38,659 nt of DNA from Octopus bimaculoides (lineage: Eukaryota), in NCBI RefSeq assembly GCF_001194135.2, contig NC_068995.1, positions 40,514,194-40,552,852 of the forward strand, given 5' to 3'. The notes beneath the pieces were generated by a model. It worked only from the letters and a program-made list of their open reading frames with translations. It was not told where the DNA came from and made no database searches. Below are positions 1,495 to 36,836 of the stretch, one piece after another (the stretch's first letter is position 1; each line of letters begins with the position of its first letter). Position numbers and translations under genes: made by a program.

Positions 1495-1645
1495 GCGCAG
1501 ACCGTTAATGTGTAGTCTATAAGTTCTCTGCACAACCTTGTGGTACCAGGTTCGATCCTTCAACGCAGCACTTTGAGCAATTAGTTTCTACACCTACCCC
1601 AAGTTGGCAAATACCTCATGTGTAGAATTTGGTTGACGGAAACTG
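1495..1645 (+). mobile_element. Degraded 5' part of SINE family A
   Basis: ggtaccaggttcgatcc (B-box-like) ... gaatttggttgacggaaactg matches the head of the copy at 4958-5120. Confidence 0.6.
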
Positions 1646-2150
1646 TGCAAGAAACTCTGAAAGAGCATCTGCAGTGATTTTGGAAGAGTATTTTTACATG
1701 TCCTAAGAGAACAGTTGGGAGTACATCTCGGCCCGTTGCTGAGTTTGATCTCATTTCATCAATGGCCGATATTACATCCTCTTCTGTTATGTTGATGTAA
1801 TCGATGGTTGCCTCTTTTCCGAAAACTCCTTCGAAAACCCTTGAAAAACTCCTTCGGCTTGTTTATCTGCATATTTTCCAATGGGGAAGTGAAAACACTT
1901 CGGAATTGTTTATTTGGTGCTTCACTTATCTTCCCCTGGTCTGCAGTTAGTGACCTGTTTTTACCAAATAGTGGCCCTATCTTTTAGCGTACTGAGGCAG
2001 ACACCTTCAGGATATCTTTTTATATTTTCGACTGCCCTGGTTTCTCTTTCTTCTCTTTCTTTTTCATGGGAGATTTTGAGGTTTATTTTCTATCTCGAAG
2101 AGTTCCTCTGTCAGGTGGGATTTAACTTTGGCGTCGATGTTGCCACAGCT
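1646..2150 (-). mobile_element. Decayed LINE ORF2 fragment (CR1/Jockey-like; region between endonuclease and RT)
   Basis: Minus-strand translation with frameshifts: ISHEKEREERETRAVENIK ... KISEAPNKQFRSVFTSPLENMQINKP ... IDYINITEEDVISAIDEMRSNSATGRD ... LQMLFQSFL. This resembles the 'SVFT...I...DV..AI..M..NSA.GPD' segment preceding LINE RT domains. Confidence 0.7.
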
Positions 2151-3600: not shown

Positions 3601-3988
3601 TGGAGGTGCAATGGCCCAGTAGTTAGGGCAGCGGACTCGCGGTCATAGGATAGCGGTTTCGATTCCCAGACCGGGCGTTGTGAGTGTTTATTGGGCGAAA
3701 ACACCTAAAGCTCCACGAGGCTCCGACAGGGGATGGTGGCAAACCCTGCTGTACTCTTCCACCACAACTTTCTCTCACTCTTACTTCCTGTTTCTGTTGT
3801 GCCTGTAATTCAAAGGGTCAGCCTTGTCACACTGTGTCACGCTGAATATCCCCGAGAACAACGTTAAGGGTACACGTGTCTGTGGAGTGCTCAGCCACTT
3901 GCACGTTAATTTCACGAGCAGGCTGTTCCGTTGATCGGATCAACTGGAACCCTCTACGTCGTAAGGGACGGAGTGCCAACAACAACAA
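3601..3988 (+). mobile_element. Full-length tRNA-derived SINE, family B, with (AAC)n tail and TSD
   Basis: A box tggcccagtag (3612), B box ggtttcgattcc (3655), (aac)n tail; flanks catgtatac(a/t)g at 3590 and 3989; near-identical reverse copy at 36445-36836. Confidence 0.9.
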
Positions 3989-4957: not shown

Positions 4958-5136
4958 GGCGTAGGAGTGGCTGTGTGGTAAGTAGCTTGCTTACGAACCA
5001 CATGGTTCCAGGTTCAGTCCCACTGCGTGGCACCTTGGGCAAGTGTCTTCTACTATAGCCTCAGGCCGACCAAACCTTTGTGAGTGGATTTGGTAGACGG
5101 AAACTGAAAGACGCCCGTCGTATATATGTATGTATA

Positions 5137-5224
<88 letters not shown>

Positions 5225-6954: not shown

Positions 6955-7678
6955 TGTATGAGTGTGTGATACAACATACACCGTAACGATTTCACAACGA
7001 GTCTATACCTATCTATGAACATAAGGAGAAATAGTAGACAAGTAAATATATATTTTTTATGTTGGACCTCGCTTCTGATCAAATGCGGTTCGGTTTAAAT
7101 ATAGGACAGCTTAAAAGACTCATGTATTTTTTTTCTTCACGGCTTATTAATCCCTTCTTTGTATGTACTGGTTGTTGCTGGCGGCCAGCTTTCTGGATAC
7201 AATACATACATGCTAACATTGGTGTAAAGATTAGACACACGACTGTACTTAAGCAAACATTTGTACAGACACACAAGCACAAACAAATATCAATATATAT
7301 GTGCGTAAGAGCGCACATATATATATATATATACATATTTATGTTTGTGTATGTGTGTGTTGTGTGTGTTTCTGTGCTTAATGTATANNNNNNNNNNNNN
7401 NNNNNNNNNNNNNNNNNNNNNNNNNNNNNNNNNNNNNNNNNNNNNNNNNNNNNNNNNNNNNNNNNNNNNNNNNNNNNNNNNNNNNNNNNNNNNNNNNNNN
7501 NNNNNNNNNNNNNNNNNNNNNNNNNNNNNNNNNNNNNNNNNNNNNNNNNNNNNNNNNNNNNNNNNNNNNNNNNNNNNNNNNNNNNNNNNNNNNNNNNNNN
7601 NNNNNNNNNNNNNNNNNNNNNNNNNNNNNNNNNNNNNNNNNNNNNNNNNNNNNNNNNNNNNNNNNNNNNNNNNNNNNN

Positions 7679-7709
<31 letters not shown>

Positions 7710-7725
7710 ATATTTGTGTGTATTT

Positions 7726-7760
<35 letters not shown>

Positions 7761-7829
7761 CTACACATACATGTATATGAATACGTAACACATACAACAC
7801 ACAGACACACACGTGTGTGTGTGTGTGTA

Positions 7830-8112
7830 TCTACAATAACGAAGGCGGCTATATGCAGTATAAAACCAAGAAGGAAAAATTCAGTTGTCAATAATTGTGA
7901 CTGTGTGTGCAGGGTAGCAACTACGTTGCTAGAAATAAAACTCAAAGACCCTTAGAGCCGCAGAAAAGCACATGTCTATGCACCGACAGCGGAGATAACT
8001 GCCCCACAGCGAGTGAAATCACCATACTAGCGTAGTTTGGCTTAAAGTTAAAGCTCATCATCGCTGGATGGTTTGGTTAAATCCGTCGGTATTTCGTATT
8101 TAGCATATAAAT
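7830..8112 (-). repeat. Inverted copy of the ~350-bp hammerhead-bearing repeat (ribozyme core disrupted)
   Basis: Its reverse complement aligns to 8268-8516 and to 8113-8235; the core reads cgatgatgagctttaactttaagccaaac (14-nt deletion removing the C of CUGAUGA, and GAAA>CAAA). Confidence 0.8.
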
Positions 8113-8516
8113 TATTTTTCGCAATTTAGGTGCTACCCCAGTTACAATTAGTGTTACCCTCAGTTACCATTAGTGACAATTGAATTTTTCCTTTTTGGTT
8201 TATACTCCGTATAGCCACCTTCGTTTTTTTTCTATAATTTTACCATTACCATTTTGCTGAATCATCCATTGATTCATATGGTAAATACGATATACTGACG
8301 GTCGGATGAAGCCAAACCATCCAGCGATGGAATAGTCACCACTGATGAGCTTTAATTTTAAGCGAAACTATACTAGTATGGTCATCTCGCTTTCTGTGGG
8401 ACGGTTATTTCCCCTGTCGGTGCATAGATATGTGCTTTGAGGCTCTAAGGATCTTTGACTCTTATTTCTAGCAATGTAGGTGCTACCCTGCACACTCAGT
8501 AACAATTACTGACAGT
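8113..8516 (+). repeat. Partial tandem (~1.15 units, period 350 bp) of a hammerhead-bearing repeat
   Basis: taggtgctaccc occurs at 8127 and 8477, with similar flanks (tattt..gcaat.taggtgctaccc...cagt.ac.att..tgaca). Confidence 0.8.
8336..8384 (+). ncRNA. Type I hammerhead ribozyme with intact core
   Basis: Stem I acca(8338-41)/tggt(8379-82); CTGATGA 8342-48; stem II gctt/aagc 8349-63; GAAA 8364-67; stem III acta/tagt with a tac loop; GUA cleavage triplet 8376-78. Confidence 0.85.
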
Positions 8517-8519
8517 CGT

Positions 8520-8631
<112 letters not shown>

Positions 8632-11194: not shown

Positions 11195-11700
11195 ATGGAA
11201 GGTGCATTCTTGAAGTTTTGAGACTTATTCAGGAAAGACATCCATTAATTTCTAAGAAGTACAAAACACTAAGCTCCTTCAAAAGTAAGATCCTTTGATT
11301 TCAATGCACTTGTAGTACTCCTGCCACTTCGTGTAGGCCCCGTGGAAGTCCAAAGTAAATGTGACCAGGATCTTTGTTATAACATCTTTCATCTTCTCAA
11401 TGTCTTCAAAACAACTTCCCCTGAGGCTCTCCTTAAGCTTGAGGAACAACCAAAAGTCACAGCAAGCTGGGTCTGGACTGTATGGAGTGCGGGGAATAGT
11501 TTGACGCCTGTCTCTGTCAAGTAGTCGGTTACCAGGATGGAATTGTGGACGGATTCCTTGTCTCGGTGCAAATTCCACCGACCCAACTGGAAGCGTTTTG
11601 TCCTTTTGCAATGAAATATTTTCCTAGACTCTCTCTCAAACCAACAAAAGATGCTCTTTGTTGATCGTCTTGCCAAAGGAACCAAATAGATGTAGATTAT
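11195..11700 (-). mobile_element. Mariner (DD34D) transposon 3' remnant with terminal inverted repeat
   Basis: Frameshifted translation VPL..TINKE...WNLHRDKESVHNSILVTDYLT...PYSPDPACCDFWLFLKLKESLRGSCFEDIE...YKCIEIKGSYF (YSPDLAPxD-type motif); TIR-like ggtgcattcttgaagttttgagact at about 11201-11225. Confidence 0.9.
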
Positions 11701-13330: not shown

Positions 13331-13750
13331 TTTATTCGTTTATTCTTTTATTCTTTTACTTGTTTCAGTCATTTGACTGCGACCGTACTAGAGCACCTCT
13401 TTGAAGGATTGTTGTCGAATAAATCGACCCCAGGACTTATTTCTTAAGCCTAGTACTTATGCTATCGGTCTCTTTTGCCGAACTACTAGGTTATGGGGGC
13501 GTAAATGCATAAAAAATTGGTTGACAAGCGGCGATAGGGGTGAGGGACAAATACAGACACAAAGACACACGCACACACATTGTTATCTACACATATATAT
13601 ATATATACGACAGGCTTCTTTCTGTTTCCGTCAACAAAATCCACTCACAAGGCTTTGGTCGGCTCGAGGCTATAGTAAAACACACTTGCCCAAGGTGTCA
13701 TGCAGAGAGACTGAACCTGGAACCATGGGTTGGGAAGCATGCTTTTTATC
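13331..13750 (-). mobile_element. SINE family A, near full length (5' end in gap)
   Basis: Reverse complement is collinear with 4958-5418 and has a short internal microsatellite. Confidence 0.9.
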
Positions 13751-15379
13751 NNNNNNNNNNNNNNNNNNNNNNNNNNNNNNNNNNNNNNNNNNNNNNNNNN
13801 NNNNNNNNNNNNNNNNNNNNNNNNNNNNNNNNNNNNNNNNNNNNNNNNNNNNNNNNNNNNNNCCTGCACTTACAGTGGACGGGTGCTGAGCGCGCCCCAG
13901 CCTAAAATTTGTTGTTCAAATTCAGGTCTCTATATTCAGAGCAAAACCACCTCATCCCCTTGTGAGAATGGAGCCCTCCTACCTCAAAGTAAAAAATAAA
14001 TATCCGAATCAGAAAGTGCGAGAAGACTAAACATTTTATTTCATCGGGAAAAGAAGGGGTTTTTCATGAAGTGAGATCACTTCCTCTGCATAGGAGCGGG
14101 ATTTTTGTCCAGCAAAAAGAAGACCTTCTCCTGTGAAATGGAACACATCGCTCTTGAGGAGAAACCTTTCTTCCCGAATGAACTGAATTTTACAGCCCTT
14201 CGTGTAATCCAAAGAGGGTGATACAAGATGCGTATGAAATAATTTGGGGCTTTCCAGCCAATCAGAGAAGTGATGAAAGAAAATAAGAAAAAAAATCAAA
14301 GAAAAGATCGACTGTTGATAAAGTATTCTTATAAAGTTTATAGTTTCATATTTTTTAACCAATCGTAGGACATGGCCCCTTCAGTTTTTCAAGAGCTTCA
14401 CTTGGAAGATTTTATATTTTCCAACCGAGAACAATACATGGATAGATTTTAAGGTTTGCATAATTATAACCGCGGGTACCCTAATCAGTGCCAATAATGG
14501 TTTATTCCTTTAAATGTAGATGGCTAGCTCCCTACCCCGGTCTTTTATAAATCGAACTTCGTTTATTCACTTACTTTGTTTTATTACAGTTCTTTAATTA
14601 TTCTACGTTTTCATATGTTTCATAAATTATTACACTTATCCCCACATCTATGGTGTAACGTCTTTCAAACTAACATTTTAAAGAAATCTAACTTGTTTGT
14701 TTACCTCATTACCCACGTCATGTAAAACTTCCTTTCAACGTCTAATGTTTTGTATGTATGAATGATTTGTATGGAATTGCACTCACTGGCTAAATCAAGA
14801 AATTATTGTTGTTGTTGTTGTTATATATATGTATTTATTTATTTATTTATTTCTTCCCAAATGTACCATATTAGTGATGTTGCTGCAGACTAAACAAAGC
14901 AGTACAGTTATCACAGCAGACATCAATGTCCATTCGCTATTGTGGATTTCATCTTATTTCTGGACACACGCATACACACACAAACACACACATACATACA
15001 TACATACGCACGCACGCACATTTACAAACACACACATATACACACGTGACCACTTATCTACAGACGTCATCACAAAACTGAACCATTATAACATTAATCA
15101 AATGCACCTTCACGCGAATAGCTTTCACAAAACCCAATAAACTACTTCGTCCCACCCTTCCCCCCGTCATACACTGACTAACATCTCCAGATATCAGTTA
15201 TCAAAGTTAACAGCATATGAAACACAGCAAACACAATGTCTGTCTGATCATCAACCAGAAATCATGACAATCAACCAGAGGTTTATACGTAAAATTTATA
15301 ACAAACAAAATCTTAAACTACAAAAAAAAAAAATGCATAGCATTCTCGCTATTCCACTAGAGAGGTTCTTTTACAGAAG

Positions 15380-15644: not shown

Positions 15645-16725
15645 AACCAAAATGGCTTCAGCAAAGGCTTGGAGGTTCTGATTTCTACCACAGATCCTTG
15701 CTCTCAAAAGAACTGTAGAAGAAATCAGAACCTCCAAGCAAAAAATATTTAATGTATCAGTGGATTCCTCCAAAACATTAAATAATGTCAACAAAAGGGC
15801 CGTGTTTGATAAGCCATGAATGTCCTGTAGAAAACACATCATGCTTCATTCAAAATACAGACGATTCAGGTAAAATGTTTCCAACAAGGAGACACACTAT
15901 CCCCTTTTCTCTTCATGATTCTTGTGGACTATATTTTGAGGCAAAACCTTGACGTCCAAGACAAAAGCCTCACCTTGGAACAGAAGTGATCAAAAAGTTA
16001 TCAGAGCATGCGTCAGAGCATCATTCTGTTAGTGATCTTGGTCCTCACACCACATCAACTATATGATGCATATCATTTGTCAACATCCCCTGATAACAAA
16101 TATATCCGGTAGATGACGTATGTTTCTCAACACTAAGAACATTGAGTACATGACCATCAATGAGAGTGAAAGCGGCTAAGAAATTTATCTTCAAGATGGT
16201 ACGTAATTCAAAGAATTCAGTGATTTCATGCACTTTGGGTTCAATGTTGTTGATGGTAAGAAAAACCTTCTTACACGAAAGTAACTAGCCTGGAGTGTCT
16301 GTAAAAAGCTTCTAGTATTTCAAAGTCAACAAGGCTTTCCTTCTTCGGAGTAAGGAGCGTTCTTCTCCATAGAGCTCAAACCCGGACTATCAAAGAGCTT
16401 CAACGTAAACTTGACAGAACGTACATCAGTCTTCTTATGAGGGCTCAAAATATCTTATGGAATGAACACAAAACCAAAGAGGGGATTTAGGTACACATTC
16501 CATCCTTCTCTACTGGCCACTACTTTTGTGCTGCATACCAGGCTATATCACGTGTTTTTAGGAAAGAATTTTGAATACTAAAAGGTGATGGGGATCGCTT
16601 AATTAGGTCGATGTTATTTGCAAGCGACTCACAAATTGAGGGTCTACTAAAGATAATGTAGGAGGAAGGTAGAGATTCTTGATGCAACTTCGTGGAACGC
16701 ATTTCTGTTGCAGCTTCTTGAGAAG
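15645..16725 (+). mobile_element. 5'-truncated, decayed RTE-type LINE (RT and C-terminal region)
   Basis: Motifs QNGFS, QILALKRTVEEI, VSVDSSK (xDFSKAFD-like), QGDTLSPFLFMILVDYILR (15885), EYMTIN, DFMHFG, LAWSVCKKL, SVLL...KLDRTYISLLMRAQNILW; many stops and frameshifts. Confidence 0.9.
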
Positions 16726-16850: not shown

Positions 16851-17424
16851 ATGCTGCACTTAATTACACAAAAAGACAAAGCACATTAACAAAAAAGATA
16901 ATTTGCTTTGCATCATAGTTACATCTGAAATTAGTAAAGATTCAAAGAAAAACACACAAAAGATAGAACAAGACAAACAACATCAACGGCAAACCTCACA
17001 CCTAAACGTCACAAACTTAAACACTTCAATAAGCATGTTTACATAAAAGTAAAAAAAAAAAAAATTCACAAAGAGAAAAATATAGAACAAGATTTACAAG
17101 GATACATACAAAGTCTCACAAACGCGCGCGCGCACACACACACACACATACACACACACACTTTAGTAAACTGTTATTAATAGTCTCACATAAGACCCAA
17201 ATACAGCCACATAAAAGCCACAACGAATAGCAATAAAGCAAAAAAACGTGTGAAAACTTCAACTAACAATTTGTAATACGACACTTGCGCGAGCGCGCAC
17301 AAACACACACACACAGACAATGCAACAAAGAAAAGTTCTCAGACACACACACTCTCTCTCACATACACACACACGATTTTTTTTTTATATGTTTGTTTTT
17401 ATTTCTTTTAATGTCTTCCGTGTA

Positions 17425-17555
17425 GGGTGCCACCTTTTTTAAGGGTTCAGACGATTACGTCCACCTCAATACTTGAACCGCTTCTTATTTTATCGACGTC
17501 GGGAGGATTAAAGGAAAATGTTGGCAGGGGTCGGTTTTAAAGCGAGACCAAAGTT
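17425..17555 (-). mobile_element. Diverged SINE family C fragment
   Basis: Reverse complement ttttcctttaatcctcccgacgtcgataaaataagaagcggttcaagtattgaggtggacgtaatcg resembles the family C core. Confidence 0.55.
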
Positions 17556-18405
17556 AAAANNNNNNNNNNNNNNNNNNNNNNNNNNNNNNNNNNNNNNNNN
17601 NNNNNNNNNNNNNNNNNNNNNNNNNNNNNNNNNNNNNNNNNNNNNNNNNNNNNNNNNNNNNNNNNNNNNNNNNNNNNNNNNNNNNNNNNNNNNNNNNNNN
17701 NNNNNNNNNNNNNNNNNNNNNNNNNNNNNNNNNNNNNNNNNNNNNNNNNNNNNNNNNNNNNNNNNNNNNNNNNNNNNNNNNNNNNNNNNNNNNNNNNNNN
17801 NNNNNNNNNNNNNNNNNNNNNNNNNNNNNNNNNNNNNNNNNNNNNNNNNNNNNNNNNNNNNNNNNNNNNNNNNNNNNNNNNNNNNNNNNNNNNNNNNNNN
17901 NNNNNNNNNNNNNNNNNNNNNNNNNNNNNNNNNNNNNNNNNNNNNNNNNNNNNNNNNNNNNNNNNNNNNNNNNNNNNNNNNNNNNNNNNNNNNNNNNNNN
18001 NNNNNNNNNNNNNNNNNNNNNNNNNNNNNNNNNNNNNNNNNNNNNNNNNNNNNNNNNNNNNNNNNNNNNNNNNNNNNNNNNNNNNNNNNNNNNNNNNNNN
18101 NNNNNNNNNNNNNNNNNNNNNNNNNNNNNNNNNNNNNNNNNNNNNNNNNNNNNNNNNNNNNNNNNNNNNNNNNNNNNNNNNNNNNNNNNNNNNNNNNNNN
18201 NNNNNNNNNNNNNNNNNNNNNNNNNNNNNNNNNNNNNNNNNNNNNNNNNNNNNNNNNNNNNNNNNNNNNNNNNNNNNNNNNNNNNNNNNNNNNNNNNNNN
18301 NNNNNNNNNNNNNNNNNNNNNNNNNNNNNNNNNNNNNNNNNNNNNNNNNNNNNNNNNNNNNNNNNNNNNNNNNNNNNNNNNNNNNNNNNNNNNNNTCAGT
18401 TACGC

Positions 18406-19004
18406 AATAAATGAAAAATGCATTAAATACCACAAAACGTACACGTAGGACAGACACAAAAAGACCCGTAATTCTTCACCAGTTATCAACCGAAAAATAT
18501 TAATACCCAGTTTCGTATCTTTAACGTTAAGATTGAGAACTTCGTATATCGGCGGCACCCGCAAGATTTGCGTAGAATTAGATCTTGAACAAACAAGACA
18601 ATACAGGGTAGACGTACAAAAGTAAACAAATGTCATTTGAAACGATAGATGAAGACACAATAAATAAAGCCTTTCGGCCAAACACTCGAATGATGAGTAA
18701 CGCCTGGAAGAAATCCTCACCCATCACTCTCATGTCTGGCTGAAAGGCTTTATTTATTGTCTTCGCCTACCGTTTCAAATTACATTTGTTTACTTTCGTG
18801 CCTTCACCCTGTATTGTCTTGTTTGCTCAAGCCCTAATTCTACGCAAATCTTGCGAGTGACACCGATATACGAAGTTCCCAGCCTTATCGTTAAAGGCAC
18901 GAAACTGGGTATTAGTATTTTGGTCGTAACTGATGAAGAATTAGAGTGCTTCTGTGTCTGTCTACGTGTACGTTTTGTAGAATTTAATGCATCTTTCATT
19001 TATT
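18406..19004. repeat. Long inverted repeat: arms of about 270 bp (18406-18680 and 18737-19004) around a 56-bp spacer
   Basis: The arms are reverse complements, about 85% identical by eye, e.g. aataaatgaaaaatgcattaaat / atttaatgcatctttcatttatt and gcctttcggcca / tggctgaaaggc. Confidence 0.9.
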
Positions 19005-19150: not shown

Positions 19151-19308
19151 CAGGAGTGGCTGTGCGGTAAGTAGCTTGCTTACCAGCCACATGGTTCCGG
19201 GTTCAGTCCTACTGAGTGGCATCTTGGTCAAGTGTCTTCTACTATAGCCTCGGGCTGACCAAAGCCTTGTGAGTGGATTTGGTAGACGGGAGCTGAAAGA
19301 AGCCTATC

Positions 19309-19340
<32 letters not shown>
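19151..19340 (+). mobile_element. SINE family A head plus internal (GT)n running into a gap
   Basis: High similarity to 4961-5160. Confidence 0.9.
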
Positions 19341-20257
19341 NNNNNNNNNNNNNNNNNNNNNNNNNNNNNNNNNNNNNNNNNNNNNNNNNNNNNNNNNNNN
19401 NNNNNNNNNNNNNNNNNNNNNNNNNNNNNNNNNNNNNNNNNNNNNNNNNNNNNNNNNNNNNNNNNNNNNNNNNNNNNNNNNNNNNNNNNNNNNNNNNNNN
19501 NNNNNNNNNNNNNNNNNNNNNNNNNNNNNNNNNNNNNNNNNNNNNNNNNNNNNNNNNNNNNNNNNNNNNNNNNNNNNNNNNNNNNNNNNNNNNNNNNNNN
19601 NNNNTATGGAATAAATAAATAGTTCCTTAGAGAGTTTTTAGAGGGTTGTTTCATTTACCTCTGAAATGTCTGGATGATTTTTAGTGAGCTTTTCTTTTAT
19701 TTACCAGTCTAATGATTTATTTTCTATCATTTTTTAAAATCACTCCCCCCCCCCACTGGACTCTTGTTACTTCTGATTTCACGGCAGGATTCAGCATTCT
19801 TTACGTTGCCAAGTTCACTATTTCCGCAGCCAATACAAAGCCTTTCACCGTTCACATTAACCGCCGAAACCAACCTCACCCTCGACACCAAATACAATGT
19901 CAACTGTTCCACACGAATTTTACCTGGTACCATCCCACACATCGACCGCATTGCACCGGCTGCTACATAGAAAAAAAAACCCGCCCACATCGATTTTCAT
20001 CACATCACCCGTCGCACATCTTCTTCCAGTACGAACTACGTGTGCAATAGTAGTTTTTGCACTTCGCCCACACCGTAAATGCGCGCCAAAATCATACCGC
20101 CTTCACTTTAAACAGTCACGTGAATGATTTTTTCGTCGTCGCTTGCAAAACCAGCGAGCAGTGTTTTAATTCGCGTCATACGAATGAAAAATAATCTGAA
20201 TATATTTTACGTTTATAAAAATATATGTATGTATGTATGTATGTATGTATTATCATT

Positions 20258-20650
20258 TATCATTTACTTGTTTCATTTAATGGGATGCAGTCAACCTTGG
20301 GTACCACCTTGAAATGTTTTAGTCAAACGAATCGACCCTCCCCGTACTTATTTTTCAACCTGGTACTTTTTCTGTGAGATCTCTTTTGCCAAATCACCAA
20401 ATTACGAGGGTATAGATAAACCAACACCGGTCGTCAGTCGATGGTGTTGGAGGGATGAATACAAAGACACGCATACATGCACACTAAGACATATACAGAC
20501 ACACACACACATACACACACATATGTATGTACACGACGGGATTCTTTTAATTTCCGTCTACCAAGTCGAGTCACAAAGTTTTGGTTAGCTCGAGGTTATA
20601 ATAGAACATACTTGCTCAAGATGTCACTCGGCATCGAATAACTGAATAAC
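20258..20650 (-). mobile_element. Diverged SINE family A
   Basis: Reverse complement is collinear with 4958-5418; imperfect (CA)n at the internal microsatellite position. Confidence 0.8.
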
Positions 20651-21224: not shown

Positions 21225-21256
<32 letters not shown>

Positions 21257-21278
21257 GTATATGTATGTATATATATAT
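21050..21278. repeat. Compound TA/TG/TATG microsatellite
   Basis: Direct reading; abuts the gap at 21279-21588. Confidence 0.95.
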
Positions 21279-22487
21279 NNNNNNNNNNNNNNNNNNNNNN
21301 NNNNNNNNNNNNNNNNNNNNNNNNNNNNNNNNNNNNNNNNNNNNNNNNNNNNNNNNNNNNNNNNNNNNNNNNNNNNNNNNNNNNNNNNNNNNNNNNNNNN
21401 NNNNNNNNNNNNNNNNNNNNNNNNNNNNNNNNNNNNNNNNNNNNNNNNNNNNNNNNNNNNNNNNNNNNNNNNNNNNNNNNNNNNNNNNNNNNNNNNNNNN
21501 NNNNNNNNNNNNNNNNNNNNNNNNNNNNNNNNNNNNNNNNNNNNNNNNNNNNNNNNNNNNNNNNNNNNNNNNNNNNNNNNNNNNNNNNCTATAAAATATG
21601 TTCAGGTTTGCGAACGTTCTACCGAGGAAGACTTTATATCACGTTCAAAATAGCAGCTGAATTTGCAAGTATCATATTCTGCCATCTTGAAAATAAGAAG
21701 CTCACTTTGGACAACGTATTGTTGAATTTACAAATTGACGGAATGGTTGATATTGGAATACTTTTGCTAATAGCTCTGCTTGGTCAGGGTGTGACGTTGG
21801 ACTAAAGAACAACAATATATATATATATATATATATTGAGGAAGGAAAGTCTGTGCAGTCATTTCATCTGCTAGATATAACAGGCATGTCTCCCTCAAAT
21901 CGTATCCCACGGATCTTGTAAGGTGACACATCATCTTAGAAACGTTCTTCATGTAAACCGACGTGGTATTCACATCTGGAACGATTCTATGGTGCTAATA
22001 AACAACAACAACAACAACAACAACCGCAGCAACAATAAAAATACATTATAACTAAAATTGCAACTTAAAATCACGAGTTTTGCTTAAGGTCAAAAATGCT
22101 TTCCCTCTGAACAAGTTTTGACCCTTCTACACGGTACGACCCTCAGCTGCACCACAGGTGGATCACAGATCTCACCACATGGCATCTTTCACAAAAGCCT
22201 TCTACCATAGCCTAGAGTATTTGAAAGCTTTGTGAATGAAATTTGGTAGGTAGAAAGAGTATGAAATTCGTCAGATGGAATCATATGCAGACTGTTTAGT
22301 AGAATTTAACCACCACCTCAATATTACCAACTTAGAATCAGAATTTTATGCTAAATTTCAGTTGAAGAAATACCAAAAAATGTTTTAAAAATGCTAAATA
22401 TAACAAAAAAAATGCTAAAGACTAATTATATCAAAAAGCTTAATTTTTGCCTACATTATTATTTACTTTCTTTAATTATATTCAGCA

Positions 22488-23090
22488 TTAAGAAATAATT
22501 TCTTGAATTTCACTAATTTGATCACTTTCAGCTGCAGTGCCTAGGTCATGACTTCTGTATACATTCACGGTCCCAGTCTTGTTAATTATGTGTTTTGGAA
22601 TATTGAAGTTTTTGCAACATTTGCCATATCTTTTCAGGCCATATTTTATAGACAGTATTGGTCTAAGCATAGGAAGATGCATGTTGTTTTTCAATCTTGA
22701 CTTGATTACACCCATACTACTGAACAACCGTTCAACTTCTGCATTTGAGTTTGGCAATGACAATAGATTAATGGCAAAATTTGCAACATCTCTAAAAGGA
22801 TTTCCTCCAGTAGCATCTTTATATTCCAAGACTTCCAGCCAGAATGCCTCAGTATTAGATTTGTCCATTTAACTAAATGAATGCAATTAAACTTAATTTC
22901 AATTGAAGCAATTTTTTCTTCATTTGAATGCAATGCTTCTAAGACAGGTAAAATTGACTCTTTGAAATGCTGCAAGATATTCTCCACTGAAAAACATTTG
23001 ATATTCCTCAGTATATTAATATTTCCTGGCAAAGAGTGCTTGAGCTCTTTATAAAGGCAGAGTAAAAATTGTTGTGCGAATAGTATTTTC
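22488..23090 (-). mobile_element. hAT transposase C-terminal remnant (dimerisation domain), frameshifted near 22870
   Basis: LYKELKHSLPGNINILRNIKCFSVENIL... then FWLEVLEYKDATGGNPFRDVANFAINLLSLPNSNAEVERLFSSMGVIKSRLKNNM; FW...LLSLPxSNAxxERxFS is the hAT dimerisation signature. Confidence 0.9.
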
Positions 23091-27414: not shown

Positions 27415-30003
27415 TTGGACAAAGAAAATAGAGCCGATGTTCTCATACATGTTTTTCACAGCTCGGTTAACTATTAAAACATGATCTTGTGTGTCTTCCC
27501 CAGTGACACAACCAACCGCCTGTACTGGATTTGAACATAAAGCCGATGAACTTCCTCGTCCATTATTCAGCCGGCTTGTCTTTAATGTTCCAAGCTGGGC
27601 ATTTTTACAGTTTTAAAAACTAAAAATTATCTTCAGGAAGTGTCTTTTTATATACCATCGGATTGACCAAACCTTGTGAATAAAATTGAATGACGGAAAC
27701 TGCGTGGAATCCTGTCCGACGGACTATACCTTTAATTCAAAATTCCACCTTTTCACACACGGTGTAACGCTGATTCTAATTAATAATTATGTTAAGCGTA
27801 TTTGGGTGTTTATATATTCGGGTCTGTGGAACACTCGGAAATTTACCCGTTAATTTAATAAACAGGTCGTCCAATGGGTCTGACAACCGAATACACATCT
27901 TCGAAACCGCGCGCGTGTCAGTACATATGTCAGTACATATGTAGGTGTGCACATATGTGTATGTACATATATAGGCACAAAGAATATTCCAATCTTTCCA
28001 TATGTAAGGAAGAGAAAGAATAGAGAGGTAATAAGAAAACTCTGTAGACCAACGGGTAATTCATGGTAAATTCTCCCCTCCGGGGTCTATTTTTATTCTT
28101 ACCCAAAATATCGTTACTCGAGTATTTTCTTATCACCCACGTATTTCATACAGATGCCCAAAAACTGGATATCTTCTGTGTCATACTCACCAGTTTCAGG
28201 AGAGTTAGCATAGCTCATGCGCTTTGCCCATCCATCACGACTAGTCATTTTTTTAAAAAGGGAGCAGGAAAATGGCGTTTCCTTTCATCTATTTGTAATT
28301 GATGATTCCTTAACAGTTACCAATGTTATTCGTTATTTCATTTACCAGTTCGTTGGATGTTATATGTTTTCATTGGCTGACTTCGCTATTATTTATCTGC
28401 ATTTCGGCTTTTATATCATGTTAGCCTCTGTTTAAAAAAAAAAATGTTTATATGTATATTATTTCTCATTGATCATTTTAGTAGTCGTTCTGTATATGCT
28501 TGTCTGTTCCGTAATCGCATTCTGTTTTCTAAACTGTTTCATGTCTCACTAGGCAGTTAACTTGTGTATCCCTTATCTGTTATCCGGTGCAGTAGTTTTC
28601 TTATTTTGCTTGTATATCATTTTCCAGATCTTGTTGTCTTAAAGTTGATTTTATGAAAATGTTAATCAATCTATCGTTTCCTATTGATCTATTCAGGATC
28701 GTTCAACTTCTACATTCTATAGACTAATCACATCCCGTTTTGCTAGCTATGCAGTATTTTGCTCAGTTTTTCTATTTGTTCATTGCTTATGTAAACAAAC
28801 ATTCGAATCAGCCACCTTTAATTACAAATAGCCTGGACAGCAACATTAGCTGATATATCTCCACAATGTGATCCGACTGTAAAAGTACCCGATGAAGCAA
28901 CACATGGTTCGTCATGTGGCTACGCATCGCTGGAAGGAGGTGTCCCATTCGCGATCCACAACCGAACGGTAATGAGGAATTTCTGCTTTTTCTCCAAAAT
29001 TGTCTGAGCCTATAGAATATTTCAAAGCTTTCCCTAAGAGTTTAAAAACTCAGGAGAGAGAACACAAAAAGGAACCTCTATCAGCCCTGACCTGGTATTA
29101 AATAAAACAACAGCAACATTATAATATACTAACAGTTTCATATTCCGGTTACAAACCGACCAAAACCCAAAGTAAATAATCCAGACTTCTATTGACAGTA
29201 AATGTTCAGCATTCTTGTTGTTGTATACTGTGTGTGTTTGTGTGTATGTATGTTTGTTTGCGTATATCATTGTCTGTCTCATTGCTGTGTGAGTTCATAG
29301 CACATTCCTTAGAATGTGTGTGTATGGATACATATGTGTATATACATACACACATAATACTTGCATATATGTGTGCGTGTGTGTATGTATGTATCATACA
29401 TATGTGTACTCATATAAACTTATATCGCACACACACACATTCACATACACGTGAGATGAGTGCGTGTGTATGTATGTGTGTGTGTGTATGTGTGTATGTA
29501 TGTGTGTGTGCGTACGTGTATGATAAAGTTCATTTTTAAAGGATATGTCCAGCTTCTGCGTCCTTCAACAAGTTTCCTCCTTAATCCATCTTATACTCGG
29601 TCCCAAAATACCACATTTTTATCATTCCAGTTTTCGATCTTTTTGTGTTTAGAAAAGAATTTTCACAGATTTGATTTTATCAGATGAGCATGACATATAG
29701 CAGAATGTCGACATTTGTCTCAGCACCCCCTCTCTCCTTCACCCTCTACCTCCGCGTCTGTCTTTCTGTCTGTCTGTTTCCCGCTTTCCCTCCTTTCCTC
29801 CCCTCCTCGCCTCTAATTTCTCTCTCTTTCTCTCTTTTCCTTATTTGATTATTATGTTAAAGGGTTTAGCTGGTATCTCTCCATCAACTTTAATGTATGA
29901 TTGTGTATCGTAGAGAAATATTTTTGCAGCCTTTCTTATTTGTCTGCACTCCGCCGACCCCTTGAAGCCATAATGAAATGAGCAAACGAAGAATCCTCTA
30001 CGT

Positions 30004-31792: not shown

Positions 31793-32446
31793 NNNNNNNN
31801 NNNNNNNNNNNNNNNNNNNNNNNNNNNNNNNNNNNNNNNNNNNNNNNNNNNNNNNNNNNNNNNNNNNNNNNNNNNNNNNNNNNNNNNNNNNNNNNNNNNN
31901 NNNNNNNNNNNNNNNNNNNNNNNNNNNNNNNNNNNNNNNNNNNNNNNNNNNNNNNNNNNNNNNNNNNNNNNNNNNNNNNNNNNNNNNNNNNNNNNNNNNN
32001 NNNNNNNNNNNNNNNNNNNNNNNNNNNNNNNNNNNNNNNNNNNNNNNNNNNNNNNNNNNNNNNNNNNNNNNNNNNNNNNNNNNNNNNNNNNNNNNNNNNN
32101 NNNNNNNNNNNNNNNNNNNNNNNNNNNNNNNNNNNNNNNNNNNNNNNNNNNNNNNNNNNNNNNNNNNNNNNNNNNNNNNNNNNNNNNNNNNNNNNNNNNN
32201 NNNNNNNNNNNNNATATATATATATATAAATATATATATAAATATATATATATAAAAATGGAACAAAAACGCAATAGAAGGCATTAAAACGTTTGGACAG
32301 AAAGACGATACAAAGGCCGACAAGAGAAACAACAATTAGAAAAACAGGCAAAAAGAAAATACAAAACGAGCCATTCGTGGATTACTTTCCTCAGTCAAGT
32401 TCCAGAAGTCACGACCATTTCGAGCAATACATATATACATATACAT

Positions 32447-36440: not shown

Positions 36441-36444
36441 ACAT

Positions 36445-36836
36445 GTTGTTGTTGGCACTCCGTCGTTTACGACGTCGAGGGTTCCAGTTGATCCGATCAA
36501 CGAAACAGCCTGCTCGTGAAATTAACGTGCAAGTGGCTGAGCACTCCACAGACACGCGTACCCTTAACGTAGTTCTCGCGGATATTCAGCGTGACACAGT
36601 GTGACAAGGCTGACTCTTTGAATTACAGGCACAACAGAAACTGGAAGTAAGAGTGAGAGAAAGTTGTGGTGGAAGAGTACAGCAGGATTCACCACCATCC
36701 CCTGCCGAAGCCACGTGGAGCTTTAGGTGTTTTCGCTCAATAAACACTCTCAATGCCCGGTCTGGGAATCGAAACCGCGACCCTATGACTATCACCGCGA
36801 GTCCGCTGCCCTAACCACTGCGCCATTGCGCTTCCA
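36445..36836 (-). mobile_element. Full-length SINE family B with gacacat TSD
   Basis: Reverse complement is collinear with 3601-3988; gacacat occurs on both flanks. Confidence 0.9.

What the first reader, a model, noticed from the sequence alone, without database searches (positions are those of the whole stretch)
8336..8384. Intact type I hammerhead ribozyme in a non-coding repeat
Seen in sequence: every canonical core nucleotide is present (CUGAUGA 8342-48, GAAA 8364-67, GUA triplet 8376-78). Three helices close the core: stem I acca/uggu, extendable past one C-C mismatch; stem II gcuu/aagc; and stem III acua/uagu. The inverted copy has tggtga at the matching position, which would extend stem I to 6 bp. 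Established: small type I hammerheads occur in Penelope-like element terminal repeats and in non-autonomous retrozymes. Inference: a transcript of the + strand would self-cleave after A8378.
Basis: partly seen in the sequence, partly recalled or inferred. Interest (0 to 1): 0.85.

Follow-up and report, generated by a model that had tools for sequence, protein, structure and literature searches.

The report
Hammerhead ribozyme motif in retroelement copy
A 45-base stretch with every sequence hallmark of a self-cutting hammerhead RNA sits inside a 350-base non-coding mobile-element copy in what is probably an octopus-type genome; that is the usual home of such ribozymes in animals, so it is real but ordinary, and this copy is probably weakened.

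Summary
Positions 8338-8382 (+) carry a complete type I hammerhead core, CUGAUGA, GAA, A15.1-U16.1 and A17, closed by three 4-bp helices. It is the only such motif in the window. Shuffled windows give one in about 0.2% of cases.

Rfam finds nothing at gathering score. It gives only sub-threshold hammerhead-clan hits of 24.5 and 19.8 bits. A hammerhead in the terminal repeats of a Penelope-like element (PLE) from Argonauta hians scores no better, at 20.7 bits.

The motif lies in a 350-nt, 38% GC, non-coding unit. The insertion has 1.15 direct units plus a head-to-head inverted truncated copy, and microsatellites flank both outer ends. This is the known insertion signature of PLEs and their non-autonomous derivatives, the non-LTR retrozymes.

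The inverted copy keeps helices II and III but has lost C3 and the 5' strand of helix I, and it has G12→C. It also carries G where the intact copy has the C-C mismatch. With that G, the hammerhead becomes the minimum-energy fold.

My verdict is a genuine hammerhead-lineage motif in a solo retrozyme-like copy. The core is intact, but helix I is weak and activity is untested. It is a new member of a known kind.

The parts
8338..8382 (+). Type I hammerhead motif. Helix I 5' strand ACCA 8338-41 (extends to U8336 past the C8337-C8383 mismatch). Core C3-A9 at 8342-48. Helix II 8349-63. G12 A13 A14 at 8364-66. Helix III 8367-77. Predicted cleavage between A8378 (position 17) and U8379. Helix I 3' strand UGGU 8379-82.
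   Evidence: Read directly. Only descriptor hit in the window. Seen in 5 of 3000 shuffles. Rfam sub-threshold hits: Hammerhead_3 24.5 bits and HH9 19.8 bits with type I topology.
8323..8327 (+). Possible distal closing stem of helix I. AGCGA pairs with UCGCU 8387-8391 across a 10/4-nt internal loop, which would be a candidate 'loop 1'.
   Evidence: Appears in the constrained fold and in the minimum-energy fold of the C8383G variant. Both strands are also present in the inverted copy, with different spacing. This is inference only.
8387..8391 (+). 3' strand (UCGCU) of the possible distal stem. In the present sequence it pairs alternatively with AGCGA 8361-8365 in the competing inactive fold.
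8367..8382 (+). A 16-nt palindrome, ACUAUACUAGUAUGGU (perfect if G-U pairs are allowed). It overlaps helix III, the cleavage site and the 3' strand of helix I. It forms the competing hairpin, or a 16-bp intermolecular duplex.
   Evidence: Minimum-energy folds and cofold.
8113..8514 (+). Direct (sense) copy of the repeat, 1.15 units of a 350-nt unit. The start, ttatttttcgcaatttaggtgctaccc at 8113, recurs at 8463. It is 38% GC and has no ORF above 55 codons. Its 3' end abuts a (CA)n(TA)n microsatellite.
7838..8112 (-). Inverted, 5'-truncated copy of the same unit, joined head-to-head to the direct copy at 8112/8113. Its 3' end abuts a (GT)n/(TA)n microsatellite, and it ends at a different unit position from the direct copy.
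8019..8060 (-). Dead hammerhead relic in the inverted copy. It keeps UGAUGA, helix II and helix III, and reads UGGUGA. It has lost 15 nt (C3 plus the helix I 5' strand) and has C in place of G12 at 8039.
   Evidence: No hammerhead hit in Rfam.
7679..7830 (.). Left flanking compound microsatellite, (TA)n/(GT)n. This is the target-site context.
8517..8629 (.). Right flanking compound microsatellite, (CA)n(TA)n. This is the target-site context.

Best explanation
The motif is a genuine hammerhead-lineage element. It is a canonical-core type I hammerhead carried on the sense strand of a roughly 350-nt non-coding, non-autonomous retroelement of the Penelope-like-element / non-LTR-retrozyme kind.

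How the family would work (inferred from established knowledge of these families):
- Master copies are tandem arrays that are transcribed as multimers.
- Each hammerhead folds into a three-way junction of helices I to III.
- The 2'-OH of position 17 (A8378 here) attacks its own 3' phosphate. G12 (G8364) acts as general base and the 2'-OH of G8 (G8347) as general acid.
- This produces unit-length RNAs with a 5'-OH (U8379) and a 2',3'-cyclic phosphate.
- These RNAs can be circularised by a tRNA ligase and copied into DNA by a PLE reverse transcriptase.

How this locus arose (inferred from its anatomy):
- It is one insertion event into a microsatellite.
- Both strands of the cut target primed cDNA synthesis, which gave two copies joined head-to-head with their 3' ends facing outwards.
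- One copy is longer than a unit, which implies a multimeric or circular template.

State of this locus:
- It is a solo copy. The inverted arm's ribozyme is dead and the direct arm keeps a complete core.
- Helix I of the direct arm is weakened by a G-to-C change at 8383.
- A + strand transcript could be cut at most once, at 8378/8379, and probably inefficiently.
- I expect no function for the host.
For: Shown directly:
- The core and helices are complete.
- The motif is rare in shuffled windows, about 0.002 per window.
- The top Rfam matches for the stretch are hammerhead families.
- Unit, tandem and inverted anatomy, microsatellite flanks, low GC and absence of coding are all verified.

Evidence from the sibling copy:
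- It retains 9 of the 11 invariant core bases counted here (C3-A6, G8, A9, G12-A14, A15.1, U16.1), both hairpins and the cleavage triplet.
- None of the 5 substitutions across 8343-8384 falls in the 20 helix positions (P=0.03).
- The 15 nt it lacks has no duplicate of 7 nt or more in the element. A deletion in the sibling is therefore more likely than an insertion that happened to supply C3 and ACCA.
- Its G opposite C8337 turns helix I into 6-7 bp and makes the hammerhead the minimum-energy fold at -14.1 kcal/mol. This matches the 6-bp helix I and 4-bp helix II reported for canonical metazoan hammerheads (PMC4209133).

Evidence from the literature on architecture:
- PLE insertions show a partial tandem, an inverted 5'-truncated copy, microsatellite targets and different ends (a 'tail') (PMC8557442).
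- The PLE enzyme cuts and extends both strands (PMC11167929).
- Paired motifs on opposite strands 100-700 bp apart have been reported (PMC4209133).
- Retrozyme units are 150-450 bp with GC below 50% (PMC7229834).
- Solo monomers are common (bioRxiv 10.64898/2026.07.22.740005).

Evidence from a related genome:
- A SINE-like repeat links the window to octopods.
- 20 kb of Argonauta hians holds a PLE with a GIY-YIG ORF and a weak RT match. Its 88%-identical terminal repeats carry identical canonical type I hammerheads.
- The same stretch holds a 357-nt array with a head-to-head inverted copy and a hammerhead-shaped motif whose helices differ from the window's by compensating changes.
- That PLE hammerhead scores only 20.7 bits in Rfam, so sub-threshold scores are normal for this class.
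Against: - There is no Rfam hit at gathering score.
- The helices are short and A/U-rich. The hammerhead fold is -4.1 kcal/mol against -5.1 for the minimum-energy fold of the 49-mer. It makes up about 0.05% of the ensemble in 76 nt, and fold energies do not differ from shuffles (z -0.03).
- Only one sibling copy was available and its core is dead, so family-level conservation of the core is inferred, not shown.
- No other copy was found in the window or in the viral, metagenome, prokaryote-genome or protein collections.
- The hammerhead segment is no more conserved between the two copies (88%) than its flanks (86-87%).
- No autonomous PLE was seen next to the insertion.
- No expression or cleavage data exist.
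Confidence: 0.75

Rival explanations
1. Chance look-alike. An A/T-rich repeat happens to contain CUGAUGA and GAAA with three short complementary stretches. No ribozyme was ever encoded.
For: Scores are sub-threshold in Rfam. The helices are weak and the fold is not favoured. At about 0.002 per window, a gigabase-sized genome should contain on the order of a hundred chance motifs of this quality. The sibling copy lacks a working core.
Against: The sibling copy shows that the motif's hairpins and 9 of the 11 invariant core bases counted here pre-date the two copies. Creating the perfect core in the + copy would need a 15-nt insertion ending in exactly ACCAC plus a C-to-G change at exactly position 12. 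The motif sits on the sense strand of an element with the PLE/retrozyme insertion signature. The sibling's G at the mismatch position restores a 6-7-bp helix I and the hammerhead as minimum-energy fold. A related genome has the same kind of element with the same motif shape.
Confidence: 0.1
2. Active, host-relevant ribozyme at this locus. The hammerhead efficiently cleaves a host transcript, for example an intron or UTR, and has been co-opted in the way the amniote intronic hammerheads have.
For: The core is fully intact. The best type I Rfam match is to HH9, an intronic hammerhead family.
Against: The helix I mismatch and the competing palindrome predict poor folding. The locus is an ordinary two-armed transposon insertion in microsatellite DNA with about 13% divergence between arms and a decayed sibling, so nothing points to purifying selection. 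No exon or gene was recognised nearby; the only protein-family match is a hAT transposase remnant.
Confidence: 0.05
3. Type III hammerhead at 8330-8373, which is Rfam's best-scoring reading. Helix III would be GAAUAGU/ACUAUAC and cleavage would follow C8337 of a GUC triplet.
For: Hammerhead_3 gives the highest score, 24.5 bits. The 7-position pairing 8330-36/8367-73 (one mismatch) and a GUC triplet do exist.
Against: Only 4 nt (ACCA) lie between C8337 and C3, so helix I cannot form. The model simply deleted its helix I hairpin (alignment). The same four bases would have to serve as both strands of helix I. That pairing is better seen as one more competitor of the type I fold.
Confidence: 0.02
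4. C/D-box snoRNA-like element, with UGAUGA read as a C box.
For: Weak Rfam C/D-box matches of 13-14 bits on both copies.
Against: All E-values are around 1-10. There is no D box (CUGA) near a terminal stem and no guide region. The matches rest on the UGAUGA heptamer alone.
Confidence: 0.01

Closest known systems
Non-LTR retrozymes of invertebrates, such as those of the mussel Mytilus galloprovincialis and the coral Acropora millepora (Cervera & de la Peña 2020, PMC7229834)
   Same: Non-coding unit of a few hundred bp (350 nt here). GC below 45%. Type I hammerhead on the sense strand. A helix III stable enough for monomeric action. A copy longer than one unit, which implies a multimeric or circular template.
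   Different: This locus has only 1.15 units and one live hammerhead, so it cannot release a circle. No array with two or more hammerheads was seen. circRNA expression is unknown. No sequence similarity to any published retrozyme could be tested.
Hammerheads in the pseudo-LTRs of Penelope-like elements (Cervera & de la Peña 2014, PMC4209133; Craig et al. 2021, PMC8557442). The Argonauta hians PLE found here is an example (L005 13899-14262 and 19138-19476).
   Same: Type I topology with a 6-bp helix I in the inferred ancestral state. Insertion as a partial tandem plus a head-to-head inverted truncated copy, in microsatellite DNA, with different 3' ends. Rfam scores of about 20 bits.
   Different: There is no RT/GIY-YIG ORF between the repeats. 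The motif is of the canonical type, with a 4-bp helix II and a 4-bp helix III. It is not the PLE 'min-HHR', which has a 7-8-bp helix II and no helix III. Outside the roughly 35-nt motif it has no similarity to the A. hians repeats.
Satellite and SINE-like hammerheads: newt satellite 2 and Schistosoma Sm-alpha (reviewed in PMC6155905)
   Same: Type I hammerhead in a repeat of a few hundred bp. Palindromic sequence around helix III. A possible internally looped extension of helix I.
   Different: Those have a 1-2-bp helix III capped by a palindromic loop, and documented loop 1-loop 2 contacts and cleavage. Here helix III is 4 bp with a triloop. The palindrome is offset so that it buries the cleavage site, and no tertiary contacts can be assigned.
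Rfam RF02275 Hammerhead_HH9 and RF00163 Hammerhead_1
   Same: The best type I-topology alignment, positions 8338-8382, is to HH9: ACCA|CUGAUGA|GCUU..AAGC|GAAAC...GU|A|UGGU.
   Different: It scores 19.8 bits against a gathering score of 52. RF00163 scored lower still, against a gathering score of 34.

Membership tests
Hammerhead ribozyme, type I | Invariant core: C3 U4 G5 A6 N7 G8 A9, G12 A13 A14, the A15.1-U16.1 pair, and H (not G) at position 17 | tested here: met
   8342-8348 reads CUGAUGA. 8364-8366 reads GAA. A8367 pairs with U8377. A8378 is position 17. The G10.1-C11.1 pair is also present (G8349-C8363).
Hammerhead ribozyme, type I | Three helices around the core, with helix I open-ended | tested here: met
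   Helices of 4, 4 and 4 bp. Helix I is marginal: 4 bp, then a C-C mismatch. It becomes 6-7 bp with the G seen in the sibling copy.
Hammerhead ribozyme, type I | Covariance-model score at or above Rfam's gathering score (RF00163 or clan CL00010) | tested here: not met
   No hit at gathering score. Best scores are 24.5 bits (Hammerhead_3, gathering score 48.5) and 19.8 bits (HH9, gathering score 52). Control: a PLE pseudo-LTR hammerhead from A. hians also fails, at 20.7 bits against 34.
Hammerhead ribozyme, type I | Conservation of the core and compensatory change in the helices among homologues | tested here: inconclusive
   Only one sibling copy is available. It has 0 of 5 substitutions in 20 helix positions (P=0.03), but its own core is broken. 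Comparison with the A. hians motifs shows the helices differ by compensating changes, but position-by-position homology is unproven.
Hammerhead ribozyme, type I | Loop 1-loop 2 tertiary contacts of natural hammerheads | not testable with these tools
   A candidate internal loop (8328-8337 / 8383-8386) and the 7-nt loop 2 exist. No contact can be assigned from sequence.
Hammerhead ribozyme, type I | Mg2+-dependent self-cleavage 3' of position 17, giving a 2',3'-cyclic phosphate and a 5'-OH | not testable with these tools
   Folding predicts the active fold is a minor conformer, about 0.05% in 76 nt.
Non-LTR retrozyme | Non-coding unit of about 150-450 bp with GC below 50% (PMC7229834) | tested here: met
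   350-nt period, 38% GC, longest open frame 55 codons, no Pfam domain.
Non-LTR retrozyme | Tandem array in which every unit carries a type I hammerhead, which is the definition of an active retrozyme in bioRxiv 10.64898/2026.07.22.740005 | tested here: not met
   Only 1.15 units and one hammerhead lie on the + strand. The second motif is on the opposite strand and is dead. This fits the 'solo monomer' class described in that paper.
Non-LTR retrozyme | Expression as unit-length linear and circular RNA | not testable with these tools
   No transcript data are available.
Penelope-like element (autonomous) | ORF encoding a reverse transcriptase and a GIY-YIG endonuclease between the pseudo-LTRs | tested here: not met
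   The insertion (7838-8514) is bounded by microsatellites and has no ORF above 55 codons. The window ORFs I scanned gave only a hAT domain.
Penelope-like element (insertion signature) | Partial tandem, an adjacent inverted 5'-truncated copy, a microsatellite target, and unequal ends (PMC8557442) | tested here: met
   The same layout occurs in the A. hians 357-nt array.
PLE 'min-HHR' variant | Long helix II (7-8 bp), short helix I (4-5 bp), and no helix III or a single pair (PMC4209133) | tested here: not met
   Helix II is 4 bp and helix III is 4 bp with a triloop. The motif is of the canonical type.

The most novel reading that the evidence does not exclude
Octopod cephalopods may harbour an undescribed group of roughly 350-nt PLE-dependent retrozymes whose ribozyme module departs from the textbook form in two ways. 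First, in the window copy, a 16-nt palindrome overlapping helix III, the scissile site and helix I could act as a built-in switch between an inactive duplex or hairpin and the active junction. Second, the A. hians 357-nt array is 99% identical between its units, so it amplified recently, yet it carries CCGUUGA in place of CUGAUGA (U4C and A6U). That would be either a naturally tolerated core variant or proof that such arrays amplify without ribozyme activity.
Probability: 0.12. Interest if true: 0.5.

Novelty: new member of a known kind. Interest (0 to 1): 0.3.

Why it matters
Type I hammerheads in short animal repeats have been known since 1987. [quoted passage not shown]

The finding has modest value in three respects:
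- It is a worked example of a bona fide-looking hammerhead that Rfam's thresholds miss. The same is true of a PLE hammerhead in a related genome.
- I found no paper describing hammerheads or retrozymes in cephalopods, so this points to such elements there.
- The head-to-head, two-armed insertion with a copy longer than one unit is a clean natural record of both-strand priming on a multimeric or circular template.

Tried and rejected
- **Rfam's top reading as a type III hammerhead (8330-8373).** Rejected because no helix I can form.
- **C/D-box snoRNA reading.** Rejected; only noise-level matches.
- **Protein-coding reading of the repeat.** Rejected; only 25-55-codon frames and no domains.
- **tRNA-derived SINE.** Rejected; no tRNA found in the window.
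- **Search for more family copies.** All of these failed:
  - Exact-pattern scans of viral contigs gave 0 hits.
  - The metagenome scan gave one chance hit in a bacterial-type coding region, L001.
  - The prokaryote-genome scan gave three hits. The only one I read (L002) lacks the core; the other two were not inspected.
  - Searching the protein collections with spurious ORFs of the repeat found nothing. The one hit in the representatives search, P0001, is a low-complexity coincidence.
  - An nhmmer profile of the two copies against the rest of the window found nothing.
  - The supplement of PMC7229834 had no matching sequence.
- **Organism identification through the hAT and mariner ORFs.** These searches timed out three times. 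Exact look-ups of window ORFs found nothing. A SINE-derived ORF finally linked the window to Argonauta hians.
- **MAFFT alignment of the four hammerhead motifs.** It misaligned the 3' halves, so I made the structural comparison by hand in a script and ran no covariation statistics on it.
- **Hammerhead-type dimer through helix III.** This would give 4+4 bp around a 3x3 mismatch, which is no better than the monomer hairpin. The cofold minimum is instead the inactive 16-bp palindrome duplex.

Full report
**What is there.** The window is a draft animal assembly. It has 12 runs of N and is dense in (CA)n and (TA)n microsatellites.

Every coordinate in the finding is correct:
- Helix I: ACCA 8338-41 pairs with UGGU 8379-82.
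- Core: C3-A9 is CUGAUGA at 8342-48.
- Helix II: GCUU/AAGC, with the 7-nt loop UAAUUUU.
- Core: G12 A13 A14 at 8364-66.
- Helix III: ACUA/UAGU, with the loop UAC.
- Position 17: A8378.
- Beyond helix I: a C8337-C8383 mismatch followed by U8336-A8384.

A further AGCGA/UCGCU stem (8323-27 / 8387-91) could close an internal loop in helix I.

**Is it more than chance?** A type I descriptor I wrote finds this motif and nothing else on either strand, even at 2-bp helices. Among 3000 dinucleotide-preserving shuffles, 5 contained a motif with helices of at least 4/4/4 bp, and 42 contained one at 3/3/3 bp.

Rfam gives no hit at gathering score. With permissive thresholds the best matches to the stretch are hammerhead families. 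Hammerhead_3 scores 24.5 bits but only by deleting helix I, so that reading is not viable. HH9 scores 19.8 bits with the type I topology at 8338-8382.

The motif alone is significant for one window. It is not significant for a whole large genome, where on the order of a hundred such chance motifs would be expected. The decision therefore rests on context.

**The repeat.** Self-comparison shows a 350-nt unit.
- The + strand holds 1.15 units, at 8113-8514. The start of the unit at 8113 recurs at 8463.
- An inverted, 5'-truncated copy lies on the - strand from 8112 down to about 7838 and abuts the direct copy head-to-head.
- Both outer (3') ends run into compound microsatellites, and they end at different positions within the unit.
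- The unit is 38% GC.
- It has no frame longer than 55 codons and no tRNA-like part.
- No other copy lies in the window.

This layout is what is described for Penelope-like elements: a partial tandem, an adjacent inverted 5'-truncated copy, a microsatellite target and unequal ends (PMC8557442). A PLE enzyme has been shown to cut and extend both DNA strands (PMC11167929). The size, GC content and non-coding nature fit the non-LTR retrozymes (PMC7229834), which have recently been argued to be non-autonomous PLE derivatives that are often present as solo monomers (bioRxiv 10.64898/2026.07.22.740005). Paired hammerhead motifs on opposite strands 100-700 bp apart were noted in Schistosoma (PMC4209133). 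The hammerhead lies on the strand that this geometry defines as sense.

**The sibling copy as a witness.** On the - strand at 8060-8019 the inverted copy reads UGAUGA-GCUU-uaacuuu-AAGC-CAA-ACUA-cgc-UAGU-A-UGGUGA.
- It keeps both hairpins and the cleavage triplet.
- It lacks 15 nt (tggaatagtcaccac, which is the helix I 5' strand plus C3) and has C for G12. Rfam sees no hammerhead in it.
- The 15 nt has no duplicate of 7 nt or more in the element. A deletion in the sibling is therefore the simpler history, compared with an insertion that happened to deliver ACCA-C.
- Of the 5 substitutions across 8343-8384, three are in loops, one is G12, one is at the mismatch position, and none is in the 20 helix positions (P=0.03).
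- The sibling has G where the + copy has C8383. With that single change the 76-nt stretch folds, as its minimum-energy structure, into the hammerhead junction with a 7-bp helix I and the distal stem (-14.1 kcal/mol).
- That matches the 6-bp helix I and 4-bp helix II reported for canonical metazoan hammerheads (PMC4209133).

I infer that the common ancestor of the two arms had a complete, well-folding hammerhead, and that each arm has since decayed in a different way. This is inference from two sequences. The hammerhead segment is not more conserved overall (88%) than its flanks (86-87%).

**State of the present copy.**
- The hammerhead fold of the 49-mer is worth -4.1 kcal/mol, against -5.1 for the minimum-energy fold.
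- In 76 nt it accounts for about 0.05% of the ensemble.
- The competitor is built on a 16-nt palindrome (8367-8382) that buries the cleavage site and the helix I 3' strand. The AGCGA of helix II/G12 also pairs with UCGCU 8387-91.
- Nearest-neighbour energies ignore hammerhead tertiary contacts, so this is a caution and not a disproof.
- With a single live motif, the locus can be cut once at most and cannot release a unit-length RNA.

**Relatives elsewhere.** Direct searches for the unit in the viral, metagenome and prokaryote collections, and through spurious ORFs in the protein collections, gave nothing that I could relate to it. The matches I read were chance ones, and two prokaryote hits were not inspected.

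A different repeat gave the link to a known organism.
- A SINE-like element with a (GT)n tail is present five times in the window.
- Its spurious ORF matched a 'hypothetical protein' of Argonauta hians.
- The DNA is 75-90% identical.
- The window therefore probably comes from an octopod.

The 20 kb fetched around that gene (L005) happened to contain three informative elements.
- **A PLE.** Its + strand ORFs give a weak RVT_1 match (E 0.05) followed by a significant GIY-YIG match (E 3.5e-5). It is flanked by 88%-identical direct repeats. Each repeat carries an identical canonical type I hammerhead, CUCUAC|CUGAAGA|UUU-uuaau-AAA|GAA|AC-gc-GU|U|GUAGAG.
- **A 357-nt array.** It has 2.3 units at 99% identity, plus a head-to-head inverted 187-nt copy, so its architecture is the same as the window locus. 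It carries a hammerhead-shaped motif with a 6-bp helix I, a 4-bp helix II with a 7-nt loop, helix III AC-uaua-GU and a GUC site. Its core box is CCGUUGA. Only this roughly 35-nt segment resembles the window unit, at 74%. Helices I and II differ from the window's by compensating changes.
- **A 354-nt array.** It has inverted parts and no hammerhead.

As a calibration, Rfam gives the A. hians pseudo-LTR hammerhead 20.7 bits against RF00163, whose gathering score is 34. That is the same level as the window motif. Failing the gathering score is therefore normal for this class and does not count against the finding.

**Conclusion.** The most likely reading (about 0.75) is a real hammerhead-lineage motif in a solo, two-armed insertion of a non-autonomous PLE/retrozyme-type element.
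- The family mechanism is taken from established work, not shown here. It comprises self-cleavage of multimeric transcripts, ligation to circles and PLE-mediated reverse transcription.
- The both-strand priming origin of the locus is inferred from its anatomy.
- Whether this copy still cleaves is open. I put roughly even odds on detectable cleavage in vitro and lower odds on efficient cleavage.
- A pure chance motif (about 0.1) is not excluded until a genome-wide family alignment is made.

The element is a new member of a known kind and of modest interest.

Noticed in passing
L005 13899-14262 and 19138-19476; ORFs 16202-16561 and 17337-17645 (+): Argonauta hians locus with a Penelope-like element. 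Its 88%-identical direct terminal repeats each carry an identical canonical type I hammerhead (14137-14176 and 19352-19391). They flank ORFs with a weak RVT_1 match and a significant GIY-YIG match. Rfam RF00163 scores the hammerhead at only 20.7 bits (gathering score 34).
   Followed up: partly
L005 14740-15744: A 357-nt array of 2.3 units at 99% identity, on the - strand, plus a head-to-head inverted 187-nt copy. It carries a hammerhead-shaped motif with two core changes (CCGUUGA for CUGAUGA), a 6-bp helix I, a palindromic helix III and a GUC site. Either the array amplified recently without a canonical core, or this is a core variant.
   Followed up: partly
L005 12391-13510: Another array, with a 354-nt period, 2.3 units, 99% identity and inverted partial copies next to (TA)n. 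I found no hammerhead in it. Its CUGAUGA...GAAA string lacks a helix II.
   Followed up: partly
window 4963-5151 (+), 19152-19340 (+), 13547-13743 (-), 20461-20627 (-), 27638-27702 (+): A SINE-like repeat, several copies of which adjoin a (GT)n/(CA)n run, occurs five times in 38 kb. It is 75-90% identical to a copy in A. hians, where an ORF across it is annotated as a 'hypothetical protein' (P0002). That annotation is probably spurious.
   Followed up: partly
window 22488-22868 (-): ORF with a hAT-family C-terminal dimerisation domain (Pfam PF05699, E 1.4e-4). This is a DNA-transposon remnant.
   Followed up: partly
window 11279-11611 (-): The ORF looks by eye like the C-terminus of a Tc1/mariner transposase. 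Pfam gave no match at E 0.01.
   Followed up: partly
window 1584-1983 (-): Open frames that by eye resemble the region upstream of the RT domain of a non-LTR (LINE-type) ORF2. Not tested.
   Followed up: no
window 3642-3987 and 36444-36789: A 346-nt inverted repeat pair, 94% complementary, 32 kb apart. These are two copies of some other interspersed element.
   Followed up: no
window 18494-18657 and 18758-18921: A 164-nt inverted repeat, 87% complementary, with arms 100 nt apart. It has a MITE-like or hairpin-forming structure.
   Followed up: no
window 28109-28193 (-): A relaxed-descriptor hammerhead-like hit with one core mismatch (CUGGUGA) and very long loops. It is most likely chance.
   Followed up: no
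window 21227-21588, 31898-32259, 2481-2850, 7388-7761: The longest 'inverted repeats' reported by the repeat finder (I1-I15) are assembly gaps (runs of N) matched to each other together with flanking TA repeats. They are artefacts, not real repeats.
   Followed up: yes
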